Of a DNA stretch of 64,000 nucleotides, positions 13,798 to 18,326 are shown one piece after another (position 1 is the first letter of the stretch; each line of letters opens with the position of its first letter). Location: positions 124,001 to 188,000 of the IMG/VR virus record IMGVR_UViG_3300027710_000011; one strand, given 5' to 3'. A program made the translations under genes and the position numbers. The notes below the pieces were generated by a model that did not search any database, was not told the DNA's origin, and worked only from the letters and a program-made list of their open reading frames with translations.

Positions 13798-14982
13798 TTA
13801 ACCGGCTGTAGCGCTTTGAGCTTCACCGACTTCGATCTCGCTGACGCCCATCACTTCGCGGGCGGCTTCCTTGGAGATGAACAGAGCCAGAGACAGGTGG
13901 CTCTCGTCAGCGATCTTGAAGATCTCGCCGATCGGCTTCGTCCAACCAGTGTAGTCAACACCGGCTTCCAGGCTGGGACCGTTACCGCGGAAGATTTGAA
14001 CGTAGCCAGCGGCGCGATGCACCAGGACCATGTTCTTGTCTGCCAGGATCGGGTCAGCGAAGTGCACGAAGCGATCGCCTTCCAGGTTCGAGAAGCTGGT
14101 GACTGCTTCCACCGGTGTGGAGTTCACGATAGCCGCGATGTAGGCCATGTCCGAACGGGTGTAAGGGAACACCGTGGTCGGAGTAGCGGCTGTGAAGACC
14201 AGGTTGAAGAACTGGATGGATTGCTCCATTGGGCCGGAGTTCTTCAACTGGAAGTTCGTGGCCTGAGCGCGCTCCACATCGTAGTTCTCAGGATAGGCGT
14301 GGTGCAGATGGATGAGGCCCTGACGGACTTTCAACAACTCCATGCCCTTCTGGAACACGTAGGCCTTGGCCTGGTTCGCTGGCGAGACGATCATCGGCTG
14401 GCTCTGTTCTGCCAGATTCAAAGTCACGCTTTCGCGCTTGCCTTCAGCCATGAAGCTGACCTTGTCGCCGATCAGTGTCACGTTCACACCAGGTCCGATC
14501 GGGAAGATCAAGACGCGGACGCCGTCGATCTCTGTGGAACGGGGCTCAGACGTGCGGTACTTGATCGTGAGCGCCGAAGACATGGTCACGTTGGTGACGC
14601 AGCGACCCAAGTCATGAACCTTGTCGAAGAAGCGTTGTTCAGGCGACTGCTCAGCCTCGACGGGTGCCGGGGTTTCAGCAGTTACGCCAGCGTTATCTTC
14701 AACCGAGGCCGAATCGTCGGGCCGTTGGACTTCCGTAGTGTCACCACTATTGGAATCGGCTGGCGCTTCTGCGACAGGAGCGGCGGGGGTTTCAGTTGTT
14801 TCGGCGGAACGAATGTCATCGTTGACGTCCTTCTTGGTTTCAGCCTCGGGAGCCGTAGCCTTGTCTTTCTTGATGTAACGGTACACACCGTAGGCACCAA
14901 GACAGACCAGTGCAATGCCTGCACCGTAGACGCCGATGCGACCGAGACGAGAGATGTTGTTCAGTTGGAAATTCATGACCAC
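13798..14982 (-). CDS. membrane-anchored hypothetical protein
   Basis: N-terminal TM (IGVYGAGIALVCLGAYGVY) followed by RYIKK, an acidic Pro/Ala linker and a globular C-terminal part. Confidence 0.8.
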   Translation of the reverse strand: MVMNFQLNNISRLGRIGVYGAGIALVCLGAYGVYRYIKKDKATAPEAETKKDVNDDIRSAETTETPAAPVAEAPADSNSGDTTEVQRPDDSASVEDNAGVTAETPAPVEAEQSPEQRFFDKVHDLGRCVTNVTMSSALTIKYRTSEPRSTEIDGVRVLIFPIGPGVNVTLIGDKVSFMAEGKRESVTLNLAEQSQPMIVSPANQAKAYVFQKGMELLKVRQGLIHLHHAYPENYDVERAQATNFQLKNSGPMEQSIQFFNLVFTAATPTTVFPYTRSDMAYIAAIVNSTPVEAVTSFSNLEGDRFVHFADPILADKNMVLVHRAAGYVQIFRGNGPSLEAGVDYTGWTKPIGEIFKIADESHLSLALFISKEAAREVMGVSEIEVGEAQSATAG

Positions 14983-15064
14983 TCCTAAAAAACCAACACG
15001 AAAAGACTCGTGGTGGTGAATGTCTCGTGAAGCGGGATTACCCCACGAGTGTTTTCAAATTGGC

Positions 15065-15421
15065 TTAAACAGCCGCTGCTGGATCAGCTTGCGCTGACGA
15101 ACCGGGGAAGAACACTTCCTTAACCTTGACGCTGATGTTCTCGAAGAAACTGCGCACAGGGATCAGGAAGAGCGCGCCGACGGCCAGCAAGCAGAACACG
15201 CAAGCAAACACCTTGCCGAACAGCACAGCAGACAGAGTCGTACCACCAGCAACGACAGCGACGGCCGCAGCGATCACGATGACCACCATGGCGAAGATGA
15301 AGATGCGGTAGAGGGCGTGCATGACGATCTTCATCAAACCCTTGGCAATGCCAAGAATCAAAGCGGTGAAGAAGTCGCCGACAAGATCGGAATACTTGTT
15401 GTTGTCTTGTGTCGTGGACAT
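15065..15421 (-). CDS. small integral membrane protein
   Basis: 2-3 long hydrophobic segments; AGGAG SD. Confidence 0.8.
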   Translation of the reverse strand: MSTTQDNNKYSDLVGDFFTALILGIAKGLMKIVMHALYRIFIFAMVVIVIAAAVAVVAGGTTLSAVLFGKVFACVFCLLAVGALFLIPVRSFFENISVKVKEVFFPGSSAQADPAAAV

Positions 15422-15578
15422 GAAAAACTCCTATTGAATGAAAATGAAGGTTGGGATAAGTAACTCGTAAGGCTTTCCTTTCTAGAAAGTGTAGAGACTC
15501 GAGCATTGATAGCTCAAGCCTCTACACACTGTGTTAAGTGCTTGAAATAATCTAGAATCTAGATTACTTCTGACGCAC

Positions 15579-16211
15579 TTAGGCGGCGGCGGGAGCCGGC
15601 GTGGCGACCACGTCGGACTTCTTGAACCAGGACTTGACCTTGGTCCAAGCAGAGGTGGCCTTGTCAGCGGTGTAGTCGACGGCGGTGTTGATTGCCGGCA
15701 TAGCGGTGCTGAAGAAGAAGTACATGCCGCAGAGGATCAGGCCGTATTCGACAGCGACCATCATCAACGCAGACATGCCCAGGGCACCCATCCAGACGGC
15801 GAAGAAGTTCAGGGCGTAGAAGGTGCTCATGTAGGCGGCGATGTTGATCACCCACTTGGCAATGTTGCGCACATTGAACGACATGCGCAGCGTCCAGGTC
15901 ACGCCTTCTTCGCCCTTGGCGCCGCCAGGAGCAGCTTGCTCGGTCTTGGTGTCGGCAGCAGGGTCGCCCTTGGCGTTGGTTTGCTCAGCGCCGGCGGCGT
16001 TGACGTTTTCGGTGTTGGCGTTGGCGGCGGCGGCGTTTGCTTCTTGAGCGTTCGAGGTCTTGTTCGTGTTCATGGTGGTTTCTTTCTTTAACGATGGAAT
16101 GGAAGGGGACACAGGGGTTCTTGGAGCGGCAGGCCTTTGGACTCTTCGTCTCGGCCTTGGCTCCGGCTCGATAATGTAGTGTACTCCATTATCGATGATG
16201 TGGAGTGCCAT
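15579..16211 (-). CDS. membrane protein (2 TM); possible second start at 16073
   Basis: GGAG SD; Ala/Asn-rich N-terminal half followed by two hydrophobic helices. Confidence 0.8.
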   Translation of the reverse strand: MALHIIDNGVHYIIEPEPRPRRRVQRPAAPRTPVSPSIPSLKKETTMNTNKTSNAQEANAAAANANTENVNAAGAEQTNAKGDPAADTKTEQAAPGGAKGEEGVTWTLRMSFNVRNIAKWVINIAAYMSTFYALNFFAVWMGALGMSALMMVAVEYGLILCGMYFFFSTAMPAINTAVDYTADKATSAWTKVKSWFKKSDVVATPAPAAA

Positions 16212-16223
16212 ATTAGGCTCCGA

Positions 16224-16295
16224 TTAGAGGGGTCTGCGGAAGAACCCAAGCGTCGGAGGCGCACATACGCACACCCTTACTAACTTGGGTTCCAT
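16224..16295 (-). CDS. candidate 23-aa small protein MEPKLVRVCVCAPPTLGFFRRPL
   Basis: AGGAG-TAAC-ATG; the stop sits directly before the SD of the next gene. Confidence 0.4.
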   Translation of the reverse strand: MEPKLVRVCVCAPPTLGFFRRPL

Positions 16296-16327
16296 GTTAC
16301 TCCTGGGAGTGATAGGCTTGTGACTGG

Positions 16328-16606
16328 TTAAGCGTACTGATGACCAGAGCCGAACTTCGACGAAACGTAGTTGATCAGCTTGAAGATCTTGGCAACAGAG
16401 GCGTCGCGAACCAAGTTGTACAGACGAGCAACCTTCTTGTTGAACACCGTGAAGTAAATCAGCACGGCGAAAATGACCCAAGGCACAGCACCAGCGGGCA
16501 TGACGGACAACAAGATGCCGCCGAACAGAGCGAACATGATGCGACGCAATCCAGCGAAGAGGATGACCTCGACGATGAAATGGATGACAGCCTTAAGTGT
16601 GGACAT
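16328..16606 (-). CDS. small integral membrane protein
   Basis: 92 aa, mostly hydrophobic, with a basic C-terminal part. Confidence 0.8.
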   Translation of the reverse strand: MSTLKAVIHFIVEVILFAGLRRIMFALFGGILLSVMPAGAVPWVIFAVLIYFTVFNKKVARLYNLVRDASVAKIFKLINYVSSKFGSGHQYA

Positions 16607-16751
16607 GACAGTACTCTCTAAAAGGTTGGGGCTCGTTAAACGAGCAAGAGGGATTCTCTATCACTCCCAACCATGGATTGCGGAAACTTCGGGTTAATGA
16701 TTGCGTAATCGTAAGGCAAATTCCTTTCAGGTTATGTTGCACAAGACTGCT

Positions 16752-17000
16752 TTAGGCAGCAGCAGCCATCACGGGTTCGACGGCTTCGGCCGCAGCGACA
16801 CCGGCTTCGGCGACTGCCGCACCGCCTTTACCGAACCAACCGGCCACAGTGTTACCGATGCCGCGGAAGAAACCGCCGGTCGCCGACAAGACAGCAGAGG
16901 TCTGTGTGGGCAGGAAGTGGGCGCAACCCAGAGCCACGGCGATCAGAGCGCCGACGGTCAGAGCGATGGCGACGGCGTGCTTCTTGATGAACTTGAACAT
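16752..17000 (-). CDS. small membrane-associated protein
   Basis: GAGGA SD then MFKFIKKH, a hydrophobic helix ending ALGC (possible signal or lipobox-like), amphipathic middle and an Ala-rich tail. Confidence 0.75.
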   Translation of the reverse strand: MFKFIKKHAVAIALTVGALIAVALGCAHFLPTQTSAVLSATGGFFRGIGNTVAGWFGKGGAAVAEAGVAAAEAVEPVMAAAA

Positions 17001-17055
17001 GATGGTATCCTCTTTGGTTGTGGAAAATGATTGAGACCGGGATGATCTCACGTGT

Positions 17056-17072
17056 GTAATATTAGGCTGAGG
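17056..17072 (-). promoter_or_regulatory. putative early promoter (CTCAGCCTAATATTAC)
   Basis: Closest match in the window to the phiKZ early consensus TATATTAC; followed by a 5' hairpin TGAGATC-ATCCC-GGTCTCA. Confidence 0.6.
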
Positions 17073-17165
17073 TGTTTTTCATTCCTAATACAGCACAAAA
17101 GCCAGGTAAGTATTTTACACTCCACCTTAACTCAAACCAGTCATATGGGTCTGAAAAAATCTTCA

Positions 17166-17735
17166 TTATACTTTTTCTATAGCTTTTTCAAAACTCCAAC
17201 CTTTTTTAACAATTCTACTGTAGAGTACGTTGTAAGAAATATTTAAATATTTAGACCATTCTACCAAGGTCTTCGTTACACCGTTATGTGTGTATGTGTG
17301 TTTATTAGAAGGTAGTGCAATTGCTGTTTCTAAATCTAGACCTCTTGATAATCTGTTTTTAATGGTCTGTACCGACAACCCTGATTGTCTGGCAAGTTCT
17401 GACGCAGTTACTTTCACATCAGCTACGGTGTAATAAACGTTATTTCGCCTATTGCTGCTTTGTTCAAGATTTGTAGCCCAACAGCAATTGTCAGGTTCGT
17501 AGTTTCCGTTAGTGTCCTTGCGCTCAATTGAATGTTGATCAGATGGTCGGAACCCCATATCCAAAATAAAAGCTTCATAGCTGTCCATCCAGCGACTACA
17601 AATAGTAATACCGCGCCCTCCGTAATCCGGATACGCTGGATGATTTGGATTTAAACAGCGTTGTTTCATATTTGCCCAAACAGCATAATGGTTATTTACG
17701 GATACATCGTGAAGATGTTTCTCGTGTTGCAACAT
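17166..17735 (-). mobile_element. free-standing HNH homing endonuclease
   Basis: W.NMKQRC.N....Y..YGGRGITIC.RW...F..DMG..P....SIER.D.NGNYEP.NC.WAT..EQ..N, then HTH-like repeats; markedly AT-rich. Confidence 0.9.
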
Positions 17736-17852: not shown

Positions 17853-18326
17853 CTACGATGAAAAAGCTTGTTTAGCTTCTTCCTTGTCACCACCGCTAGT
17901 TTCGTGGGTTGAAAAAGCAGAGATGAAAAGAACCCAGCGTTTAAAGAAACCGACGTTTGCGACTTTCATCGCTTCCAAGAAGACCATGTTTGCTTCGTAG
18001 CAATCCACCCTCATTCTGACCTTAGCGATTCTTACACGCCCAGTGGTGCGGAGATAATGGTGAACTATTGCTGCTTTCCCGTGAAGGGAATCTGGTTTAA
18101 TCCAGTTACGAAAGAATCGTGGCACCACGGCACCGGGCAAACACCATCCATGCGGGATGTGTACCCAGTACTCACGATCACGGTTACCGACATAGAAGTT
18201 CATGCACCCTCTAGTCACATAGACTGTTTGTCCTTCGCGTTGAGAAGACTTCTCGTCTACTGAGACACGGCTTGGTGCGTGAAACTTCAGGTAAGAAGTC
18301 AATTGACCACCTCGACCTAAAGACAT
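17853..18326 (-). CDS. DUF1353-like protein
   Basis: IP.G.....A.VPRFF...I.P....GKAAIVH.YL...EAN.VFLEAM...VG..KRW. Confidence 0.7.
   Translation of the reverse strand: MSLGRGGQLTSYLKFHAPSRVSVDEKSSQREGQTVYVTRGCMNFYVGNRDREYWVHIPHGWCLPGAVVPRFFRNWIKPDSLHGKAAIVHHYLRTTGRVRIAKVRMRVDCYEANMVFLEAMKVANVGFFKRWVLFISAFSTHETSGGDKEEAKQAFSS

What the first reader, a model, noticed from the sequence alone, without database searches (positions are those of the whole stretch)
16304..16669. Perfect 12-nt inverted repeat brackets one gene, with a competing 5'-UTR fold
Seen: TGGGAGTGATAG (16304-16315) and CTATCACTCCCA (16658-16669) flank the 92-aa gene, so its 5' and 3' UTRs can pair and loop out the ORF. The upstream arm can instead form a local multi-stem fold: GGUUGGG/CCCAACC closing GCUCGUU/AACGAGC and AGAG/CUCU hairpins, just 5' of the start. 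The downstream arm abuts the SD of the 23-aa ORF. Inference: an RNA switch or RNase III-type processing stem that couples translation of neighbouring genes.
Basis: partly seen in the sequence, partly recalled or inferred. Interest (0 to 1): 0.6.

Follow-up and report, generated by a model that had tools for sequence, protein, structure and literature searches.

The report
Conserved long-range mRNA helix bracketing a phage gene
In an uncultivated phiKZ-like jumbo phage, the leader of a small membrane-protein gene base-pairs with the start region of the next reading frame about 350 bases away; related phages keep this pairing through matching changes, so it is very likely a real RNA regulatory element whose effect is still unknown.

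Summary
TGGGAGTGATAG (16304-16315) and its exact reverse complement (16658-16669) flank the 92-aa gene (16328-16606, minus strand).

By count alone the repeat is unremarkable: the genome has 11 such repeats against 9.1 expected. However, it is the only one that spans a gene with both arms in non-coding DNA.

Relatives decide the matter. Four lineages, whose 92-aa proteins are only 22-36% identical, all keep the pairing:
- One keeps it unchanged.
- One shifts the register by 2 nt.
- One has a U-A to C-G exchange plus a bulge.
- Two lineages lack both arms, and also lack the element that follows the gene.

The duplex is larger than reported. It has 11-12 bp, a 5-7-nt bulge carrying GGAG, and a second 5-7-bp helix over the AUG of the small ORF. 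The geometry is the same in all four lineages.

Full-length folds favour the long-range helix. The 5'UTR alone adopts the local hairpin, which is older and more widely conserved.

The most likely role is a post-transcriptional gate on the downstream unit, acting on translation or through RNase III-type cleavage. No RNA data exist, and modelled ribosome-site access barely changes with or without the 5'UTR. I class it as a new variant of a known kind, of moderate interest.

The parts
16658..16676 (-). 5' strand of the long-range duplex in the 5'UTR of the 92-aa gene. CCAUGG(U) at 16676-16670 is the helix B strand.
   Evidence: The strand is identical in L003 and L010 and co-varies with its partner in L006. 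The arm part is absent in L008 and L055.
16304..16315 (-). It starts 12 nt after the stop codon of the 92-aa gene.
   Evidence: Pair probability is 0.58-0.97 in the 557-nt transcript.
16297..16303 (-). Purine-rich bulge GGAGUAA on the 3' strand, between helix A and helix B. It holds the Shine-Dalgarno-like GGAG of the small ORF.
   Evidence: The bulge is 5-7 nt in all four lineages. GGAGU is kept in three; L010 has GAAGC at the same place (L010's 3' strand reads ...CUCC GAGAAGCACC AUGG).
16292..16296 (-). 3' strand of helix B (C-AUGG). It contains the start codon of the small ORF, with A of the AUG at 16295.
   Evidence: Helix B is 5 bp here and 7 bp in L003, L010 and L006. Position -2 varies A / U / C / C against G (mismatch, wobble, pair, pair).
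16624..16672 (-). Local alternative fold of the 5'UTR. P1 (16672-16666 with 16630-16624) encloses two small hairpins. P1 shares UGGG with helix A and GG with helix B.
   Evidence: P1 is present in all six lineages, including the arm-less L008 and L055. L006 has a G-C to A-U exchange, and L003 and L008 have a U.G wobble, which points to RNA on the sense strand.
16328..16606 (-). The looped-out gene. It encodes a 92-aa hydrophobic protein of unknown function from a fast-evolving family of about 12 known members.
16224..16295 (-). 23-codon small ORF, a possible leader. Its RNA forms a strong hairpin at 16293-16241.
   Evidence: The ORF is open for 22-24 codons in all four arm-bearing lineages, but the reading frame and the peptide are not conserved. 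Its UAA lies 13-17 nt before the next gene's ATG. The evidence that it is translated is weak.
15579..16211 (-). Downstream gene: a 210-aa membrane protein with a conserved N-terminal extension and an in-frame internal start at 16073-16071. It is the presumed target of the regulation.
16706..16728 (-). Conserved 5'UTR motif GAAAGG-N5-GCCUUACGAUUA, about 30 nt upstream of the duplex strand. It occurs only twice in the genome.

Best explanation
This is a genuine long-range RNA-RNA interaction, maintained by selection, within one polycistronic phage mRNA on the minus strand. A continuous 19-nt stretch of the 5'UTR of the 92-aa membrane-protein gene pairs with the sequence just after that gene. Helix A has 12 bp. 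It is followed by a 5-7-nt bulge that displays GGAG, and then by helix B, which contains the AUG of the next reading frame. The 92-aa ORF is looped out.

The same 5' nucleotides can first form a local hairpin, P1. P1 is the older element. It leaves 6-8 nt of the arm exposed in its multiloop, where they could serve as a nucleation site.

Inferred sequence of events:
1. P1 forms while the RNA is being made.
2. Once the 3' partner has been transcribed, the more stable long-range duplex takes over.
3. The start region of the downstream unit (the small ORF and, through it, the long form of the 210-aa membrane protein) is then locked or marked. The 92-aa gene stays translatable.

The phage encodes a nuclear-shell (chimallin) homologue. 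Its mRNAs are therefore probably finished and exported before they meet ribosomes. That would make a helix spanning a whole ORF workable.

Shown here: the pairing, its geometry, its conservation and covariation, and its thermodynamic preference. Inferred: the order of folding and the effect on expression.
For: - Sequence: the 12-bp perfect repeat and the local fold are as described.
- Conservation: L003 keeps both arms unchanged although the enclosed protein is only 36% identical.
- Register shift: L010 keeps 12 bp but shifted by 2 nt, losing pairs at one end and gaining them at the other.
- Covariation: L006 has U-A to C-G, a 1-nt bulge and extra distal pairs.
- Cross-pairing: L006's arms pair with each other at -19.2 kcal/mol, but with the other lineages' arms at only -13.1 to -14.2.
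- Duplex strength: -25 to -31 kcal/mol, against -13 to -15 for shuffles, with 0-5 of 2000 shuffles as good.
- Geometry: helix A ends at -9/-10 from the AUG, and helix B covers the AUG, in all four lineages.
- Co-occurrence: arms and downstream element are both present in 4 of 4 lineages and both absent in L008 and L055.
- Ensemble folding: helix A probability is 0.58-0.97, 0.94-0.98, about 1.0 and 0.65 in the four roughly 555-nt transcripts.
- Strand: P1 shows wobble pairs and one compensatory exchange on the sense strand.
- Position: it is the only gene-spanning perfect repeat with both arms non-coding.
- Phage type: a chimallin homologue at E 4e-32. The phage nucleus uncouples transcription from translation (PMC12908238, abstract).
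- Precedent: 5'-3' long-distance interactions replacing metastable hairpins in toxin mRNAs (PMC6733600).
Against: - Only four independent arm-bearing lineages are available, and three of them share nearly the same arm sequence. The covariation therefore rests mainly on L006 and on the register shift in L010.
- No transcript data exist. No RNA run holds the locus, and the contigs that were laid do not cover the arms.
- Computed opening energies of the small ORF's ribosome site are high with or without the 5'UTR (11.7 vs 11.4, 16.2 vs 14.0, 12.0 vs 9.7, 13.2 vs 13.0 kcal/mol). Simple occlusion by the 5' arm is therefore not predicted to matter much.
- The small ORF's peptide is not conserved.
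- Its GGAG-to-AUG spacing of 4 nt is at the short edge for this genome, where the peak is 5-8 nt.
- The whole-region fold is not more stable than shuffles (z = -1.26).
Confidence: 0.45

Rival explanations
1. RNase III-type processing or stability element. Helix B, the bulge and helix A stack into a 17-19-bp interrupted duplex that the host RNase III cuts at the bulge. The 92-aa mRNA would then end in a base-paired 5'/3' 'panhandle' that resists exonucleases. The downstream unit would be released with a free ribosome site.
For: - The size and shape, two helices with an asymmetric loop on one strand, resemble phage T7 single-cut RNase III sites (my own knowledge).
- The geometry is conserved.
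- Modelled ribosome-site access is hardly affected by the pairing, which favours a role other than occlusion.
Against: - The duplex is shorter than the roughly two helical turns typical of RNase III substrates (my own knowledge).
- The phage has no RNase III gene, and the host is unknown.
- The distance from the stop codon to helix A varies from 4 to 32 nt between lineages.
- No processed ends could be examined.
Confidence: 0.25
2. A 5'UTR-derived small RNA acting in trans. Transcription stops after P1 and yields a short RNA whose exposed loop, together with CCAUGG, pairs with the -20 to +3 region of the small ORF on separate mRNA molecules, as a classical repressor sRNA does.
For: - The complementarity spans -20 to +3 around an AUG, the usual sRNA target window.
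- P1 is followed by a short U run in the window and in L003.
- Most small RNAs found in jumbo phage 201phi2-1 arise by premature termination in 5'UTRs (PMC11512511).
- The arm has no other good match in the genome.
Against: - The U run is not conserved in L006, L008, L010 or L055.
- P1 is a 7-bp stem closing a junction, unlike this genome's long perfect terminator hairpins.
- The terminator scan did not flag it.
Confidence: 0.1
3. A DNA-level feature, not an RNA one. The two arms would be a pair of binding sites in opposite orientation for one protein, or remnants of terminal inverted repeats of a small mobile cassette.
For: - Matching changes at two sites for the same protein would also look like covariation.
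- The gene between the arms is hypervariable (22-36% identity).
- The neighbourhood is plastic, with an HNH endonuclease island next door.
Against: - L006 has a 1-nt length difference between the two arms. A helix tolerates that as a bulge; identical protein sites would not.
- Helix B and P1 use G.U pairs that exist only in sense-strand RNA.
- L008 and L055 carry the gene without the arms, so the arms do not bound a mobile unit.
- There are no target-site duplications.
Confidence: 0.07
4. No function for the pairing. Each arm would be conserved for its own local reason (the 5' arm as part of the 5'UTR fold, the 3' arm as context of a ribosome site), and the complementarity would be a coincidence carried along by descent.
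For: - The genome-wide count of such repeats is at chance level.
- Three of the four lineages share almost the same arms.
- The z-score of the whole fold is unremarkable.
Against: - In L006 and L010 both arms changed, yet 11-12 bp are retained.
- Both arms were lost together in two lineages.
- It is the only non-coding, gene-spanning repeat in the genome.
Confidence: 0.12

Closest known systems
5'-3' long-distance interaction in type I toxin mRNAs (hok/Sok tac-fbi pairing; aapA/IsoA of Helicobacter)
   Same: - The mRNA encodes a small hydrophobic membrane protein.
- A 5' element first forms metastable local hairpins.
- That element later pairs with a sequence beyond the ORF, giving a stable folded-back RNA that controls translation (PMC6733600).
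   Different: - Here the sequestered start belongs to the next reading frame, not to the looped-out gene.
- The 3' partner is internal to a polycistronic RNA rather than at the transcript's 3' end.
- No antisense RNA is known.
- The protein has 92 aa, is not known to be toxic, and matches no toxin family.
Long-distance pairing that controls a downstream start in RNA phages (the MS2 coat-replicase 'Min Jou' interaction) and fold-back inhibition of IS10 transposase read-through transcripts
   Same: The start region of a downstream cistron is held in a helix whose other strand lies hundreds of nucleotides upstream (my own knowledge of these systems).
   Different: - In MS2 the upstream strand lies inside the translated coat gene, so ribosomes open it. 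Here it lies in an untranslated leader, so translation of the 92-aa gene cannot open it directly.
- The host here is a dsDNA jumbo phage.
RNase III processing stems (phage T7 R sites; the long-range stems flanking 16S and 23S rRNA)
   Same: - Complementary sequences flank a functional unit.
- Two stacked helices have an asymmetric internal loop, as in T7 single-cut sites (my own knowledge).
   Different: - Only 17-19 bp.
- No cleavage data.
- No phage-encoded RNase III.
- T7 sites are local hairpins, not gene-spanning.
5'UTR-derived small RNAs of phiKZ-like phages (201phi2-1 sRNA005 / phiKZ sRNA upstream of gp182)
   Same: A conserved, structured 5'UTR element in a late or structural region of a nucleus-forming jumbo phage (PMC11512511).
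   Different: - There is no sequence or positional homology.
- Those RNAs have no known target. Here a specific complementary site is identified.

Membership tests
Any curated RNA family (Rfam 15) | A match to a covariance model at or near its gathering score | tested here: not met
   In 14900-17300, both strands, the only hit is a chance miRNA match (20.5 bits against a gathering score of 62, E 0.95), and it lies elsewhere (15488-15528).
Type I toxin-antitoxin mRNA with a 5'-3' long-distance interaction | The long-distance helix sequesters the ribosome site of the looped-out toxin gene itself | tested here: not met
   The helix covers the AUG at 16295 of the next ORF. The 92-aa gene's own site lies 50 nt from the 5' arm and has the lowest opening energy of the sites tested in three of the four lineages (2.8-9.9 kcal/mol; in L003 the next gene's site is lower, 8.6 against 9.9).
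Type I toxin-antitoxin mRNA with a 5'-3' long-distance interaction | A small hydrophobic toxin of a known family, plus a cis-encoded antisense RNA | tested here: inconclusive
   The protein is hydrophobic, but it has 92 aa and no hit in Pfam, PHROGs or the Atlas. An antisense RNA cannot be tested without RNA data.
RNase III processing site | About two turns (roughly 20 bp or more) of coaxial double-stranded RNA | tested here: inconclusive
   There are 5-7 bp plus 11-12 bp, interrupted by a 5-7-nt one-sided bulge, giving 17-19 bp in total.
RNase III processing site | Cleavage by RNase III | not testable with these tools
   No RNA runs are available. The phage has no RNase III domain. The host is unknown.
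Translational coupling by long-distance pairing (MS2 type) | The downstream start is sequestered by a distant upstream strand | tested here: met
   In all four lineages the AUG lies in helix B and GGAG lies in the bulge between the two helices.
Translational coupling by long-distance pairing (MS2 type) | The upstream strand lies inside the translated upstream cistron, so ribosome transit opens the helix | tested here: not met
   The 5' strand (16676-16658) is 52-70 nt upstream of the 92-aa start codon at 16606.
Transposon or MITE terminal inverted repeats | The repeats bound a unit that is present or absent as a whole, with target-site duplication | tested here: not met
   L008 and L055 have the gene without the arms. 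The sequences next to the arms (GGT / GGA) are not duplications.
Intrinsic terminator or attenuator (for the local fold P1) | A GC-rich stem followed by a conserved U run | tested here: not met
   The scan did not call it. The U run is present in the window and L003 but not in L006, L008, L010 or L055.

The most novel reading that the evidence does not exclude
In nucleus-forming jumbo phages, mRNAs are completed and exported before they are translated. In that setting, gene-spanning 5'-3' helices could act as built-in timers or gates. A metastable leader hairpin would give way to a long-range duplex that decides when, or whether, the next membrane protein is made. That protein has a long and a short form and could be lysis-related. 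Alternatively, the leader would be released as a small RNA that targets its own operon. Either case would be a first example of eukaryote-like, structure-based mRNA control specific to this phage lifestyle.
Probability: 0.15. Interest if true: 0.7.

Novelty: new variant of a known kind. Interest (0 to 1): 0.45.

Why it matters
Post-transcriptional control in nucleus-forming jumbo phages is almost unexplored. This locus offers a compact candidate of about 600 nt. It has two alternative folds, both supported by covariation, and a defined target site, so it can be tested with a cloned fragment without growing the phage. If the pairing does gate expression of neighbouring membrane proteins, it would show that long-range mRNA structure, familiar from RNA phages and toxin mRNAs, is also used by large DNA phages whose transcription and translation are separated in space. 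If it has no effect, it is a caution about reading function into short conserved complementarity.

Tried and rejected
Searches for relatives that gave nothing usable:
- Megablast, distant blastn and tblastn of the locus against GenBank phages: no match.
- IMG/VR scans with the 92-aa protein and the virion protein: none. With a profile, only relatives at 45% identity or less, which lack the gene.
- Pattern scan of JGI metagenomes for the two 5'UTR motifs: 41 hits, all chance except the window's own record, L053.
- Looser motif scan of IMG/VR: too unspecific, and the hits in jumbo contigs were chance.
- Exact 19-mer in GTDB genomes: one hit, a coincidence inside an HtrA-like protease gene of an archaeal MAG. 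None in IMG/VR.
- DNA could not be fetched for four further relatives (the contigs of P0005, P0008, P0011 and P0083).
- L002-L005 are identical over the locus, so they provide no within-lineage variation.

RNA evidence:
- Sequencing runs: no RNA holder. The four partial DNA holders do not cover 16255-16824.

Protein identity of the 92-aa and 210-aa products:
- Pfam, PHROGs, the word search, an exhaustive profile search (11 hits, all unnamed) and the Atlas gave nothing.

Ideas considered and dropped:
- The arms as a genome-wide motif: unique in the genome.
- AGATTWTTTCA and GAAAGG...GCCUUACGA as general promoters: each occurs only twice.
- Group I intron, bypass or read-through readings of the small ORF: the frame differs in L006, and both flanking genes have their own starts.
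- A simple occlusion switch: not supported by the opening-energy calculation.

No alternative genetic code was used, and no spliced model was involved.

Full report
CONTEXT. The window is bases 124001-188000 of a 276,772-bp IMG/VR virus record. The record has these features of a phiKZ-like phage:
- phiKZ-type internal head proteins and a split multisubunit RNA polymerase;
- a virion protein whose best named relatives are Burkholderia, Xanthomonas and Ralstonia jumbo phages at 35-41% identity;
- a homologue of the phiKZ nuclear-shell protein (E 4e-32).

It is therefore an uncultivated member of the nucleus-forming phiKZ-like group. Its DNA was found in a subsurface metagenome.

Around the finding all genes run on the minus strand, in this order:
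- a DUF1353 protein (17853-18326);
- an HNH endonuclease in an AT-rich island (17166-17735);
- four predicted membrane proteins without any family: 82 aa (16752-17000), 92 aa (16328-16606), 210 aa (15579-16211) and 118 aa (15065-15421).

THE OBSERVATION. The two 12-mers are exact reverse complements at the stated coordinates, 342 nt apart, just outside the 92-aa ORF. The local fold is as described: P1 GGUUGGG/CCCAACC closes two small hairpins, and six nucleotides of the arm stay unpaired in the junction. The downstream arm ends directly before GGAG and the ATG (16295) of a 23-codon ORF. The minimum-energy fold of 16200-16760 uses the long-range helix, but the region as a whole is no more stable than shuffles (z = -1.26).

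CHANCE. The genome holds 11 perfect inverted repeats of 12 nt or more with a 50-500-nt gap. Simulated genomes hold 9.1 +/- 3.1. Number alone therefore says nothing. The 12-mer is not a dispersed motif. This pair is distinguished by position: it is the only one with a gap above 150 nt whose arms both lie outside every ORF of 90 aa or more, and such DNA makes up 6.5% of the genome.

RELATIVES. No isolate phage and no other IMG/VR record has the locus. I found relatives through the neighbouring virion protein and fetched their contigs. Six lineages carry a homologue of the 92-aa gene, and these proteins are only 22-36% identical to the window's. An exhaustive profile search found just 11 family members, all unnamed.

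What the six lineages show at the arms:
- L003 (identical to L002, L004 and L005): both arms are unchanged.
- L010: the 12 bp are kept but moved by two positions. Two pairs are lost at the proximal end and two gained at the distal end.
- L006: one U-A pair has become C-G, one pair has become a single-nucleotide bulge, and two pairs are added distally, giving 7+4 bp.
- L006 cross-pairing: its arms pair with each other at -19.2 kcal/mol, but with the other lineages' arms at only -13.1 to -14.2.
- L008 and L055: both arms are missing. The 5'UTR keeps only a minimal P1 hairpin, and the roughly 100-nt element after the gene is absent too.

Presence and absence of the two arms are thus perfectly linked across the six lineages.

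THE DUPLEX IS LARGER THAN REPORTED. Directly 5' of the upstream arm lies CCAUGG(U). It pairs with (N)CAUGG, the start codon region of the small ORF. The structure consists of:
- a continuous 19-21-nt 5' strand (16676-16658);
- a 3' strand made of helix A (16315-16304), a 5-7-nt bulge with GGAG (16303-16297), and helix B (16296-16292).

Measured from the AUG, the helix positions are the same in all four lineages. The duplex energy is -25 to -31 kcal/mol, against -13 to -15 for shuffled partners, and 0-5 of 2000 shuffles are as good. In partition-function folds of the four transcripts of about 555 nt, helix A has probability 0.58-0.97, 0.94-0.98, about 1.0 and 0.65. The 5'UTR alone adopts P1.

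P1 is present in all six lineages. It has a G-C to A-U exchange in L006 and U.G wobbles in L003 and L008, so it is an RNA structure on the sense strand. The 8 nt AGUGAUAG are not part of P1 itself: six of them (AGUGAU) stay unpaired in the junction and the last two lie in the small AGAG stem, so the exposed part could start the exchange.

THE DOWNSTREAM UNIT.
- The small ORF is open for 22-24 codons in all four arm-bearing lineages and ends in UAA 13-17 nt before the next ATG. Its frame and peptide differ between lineages. This is only weak evidence that it is translated.
- Its GGAG-AUG spacing of 4 nt is short for this genome.
- Its RNA forms a strong hairpin (z = -2.9 here).
- The 210-aa gene that follows has a conserved N-terminal extension and a 13-bp hairpin with three covarying pairs inside its first 15 codons. 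It also has an in-frame internal start that gene callers prefer in three relatives.
- The start of this gene is therefore unusually rich in conserved RNA structure.

MECHANISM. I consider it likely (about 0.8) that the pairing is real and selected at the RNA level. What it does is less clear.

The position of the 3' strand, from -20 to +3 around an AUG with GGAG in the bulge, is what one expects of an element that controls initiation. The sequence of a local hairpin first and a long-range helix later matches the metastable-hairpin / long-distance-interaction logic of hok and aapA toxin mRNAs (PMC6733600). In a phage whose nucleus 'strictly uncouples transcription from translation' (PMC12908238), a helix spanning an ORF would not be disturbed by co-transcriptional ribosomes.

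Against a simple occlusion switch, computed opening energies barely depend on the partner. For the small ORF's site they are about 10-16 kcal/mol in either case, and for the 92-aa site 3-10 kcal/mol.

The main rival is an RNase III-type processing or stabilising duplex of 17-19 bp with a one-sided bulge. The phage encodes no RNase III. A third possibility is that the 5'UTR is released as a small RNA acting in trans. Such 5'UTR-derived RNAs are common in 201phi2-1 (PMC11512511), but P1 is a poor terminator and its U run is not conserved. DNA-level explanations fit the bulge in L006, the wobble pairs and the arm-less gene copies poorly.

COMPARISON AND NOVELTY. No Rfam family matches. The element works like known long-distance translational or processing controls, but it fails the defining features of each family that could be tested:
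- It does not sequester the looped-out gene's own start, as type I toxin mRNAs do.
- Its upstream strand is not inside a translated cistron, as in MS2.
- It is not a mobile-element repeat.

I class it as a new variant of a known kind, found so far only in a small clade of uncultivated jumbo phages.

LIMITS.
- Only four lineages carry the arms.
- There are no RNA data.
- The host is unknown.
- DNA for four further relatives could not be fetched.

Noticed in passing
window 16706-16728 and about 15462-15482 (minus strand): The motif GAAAGG-N3-5-GCCUUACGA, a possible 4-bp mini-hairpin plus ACGA, occurs only twice in the 277-kb genome. Both copies are in the 5'UTRs of membrane-protein genes (92 aa and 118 aa). 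Relatives conserve it at the same places. It could be a protein-binding or processing site.
   Followed up: partly
window 17151-17161 and 15542-15552 (minus strand): AGATTWTTTCA occurs in non-coding DNA only at these two places, at the head of the two sub-clusters of membrane-protein genes. Similar sequences follow terminator hairpins in L010 and L055. It may be a cluster-specific promoter element.
   Followed up: partly
window 17166-17735: An HNH endonuclease gene (PHROG 3377, E 6e-59) sits in an AT-rich island, GC 0.34-0.42 against 0.50-0.60 in the flanks. Relatives carry an unrelated 174-178-aa gene or nothing at this site. It is likely a mobile homing-endonuclease insertion.
   Followed up: partly
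window 16168-16195 (minus strand): A 13-bp hairpin lies inside codons 6-15 of the 210-aa gene. It is kept in five lineages, with three pairs changed on both sides, and it contains a GGAGU.
   Followed up: partly
window 16071-16073: An in-frame internal ATG (Met47 of the 210-aa protein) is preceded by a purine-rich stretch. Gene callers use this start in L006, L008 and L010. The membrane protein may therefore be made in a long and a short form.
   Followed up: no
window 16224-16295: The 23-codon ORF is open in all four arm-bearing lineages (22-24 codons), although indels shift its frame and the peptide is not conserved. Its stop always lies 13-17 nt before the next ATG.
   Followed up: partly
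window 15489-15527: A 16-nt inverted repeat (88% complementary, 7-nt loop) forms a hairpin between the AGATTATTTCA motif and the GCCUUACGA motif, upstream of the 118-aa gene.
   Followed up: no
whole genome, e.g. window 4896, 23712, 25276, 38066, 43935: About 50 long perfect hairpins framed by ATAAA ... TTTAT account for nearly all the excess of short-gap inverted repeats (79 observed against about 10 expected). They are probably the phage's terminator family.
   Followed up: no
G000:C1:199770-201578 (outside the window): A 706-aa open frame is 26% identical to the phiKZ nuclear-shell protein gp54 over residues 18-600 (E 4e-32). The phage is probably nucleus-forming.
   Followed up: partly
G000:C1:112031-112130 and 112925-113068 (outside the window): Two further perfect 12-nt inverted repeats, with gaps of 76 and 120 nt, have arms that lie wholly or mostly outside long ORFs (five bases of one arm of the second repeat fall inside an ORF of 90 aa or more). 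They may be other structured RNAs.
   Followed up: no
L230:2700-2718: The 19-mer of the 5' strand occurs once in GTDB genomes, inside an HtrA-like protease gene of an archaeal MAG, where it encodes PWLGVIG. This is a chance match, not a relative.
   Followed up: yes
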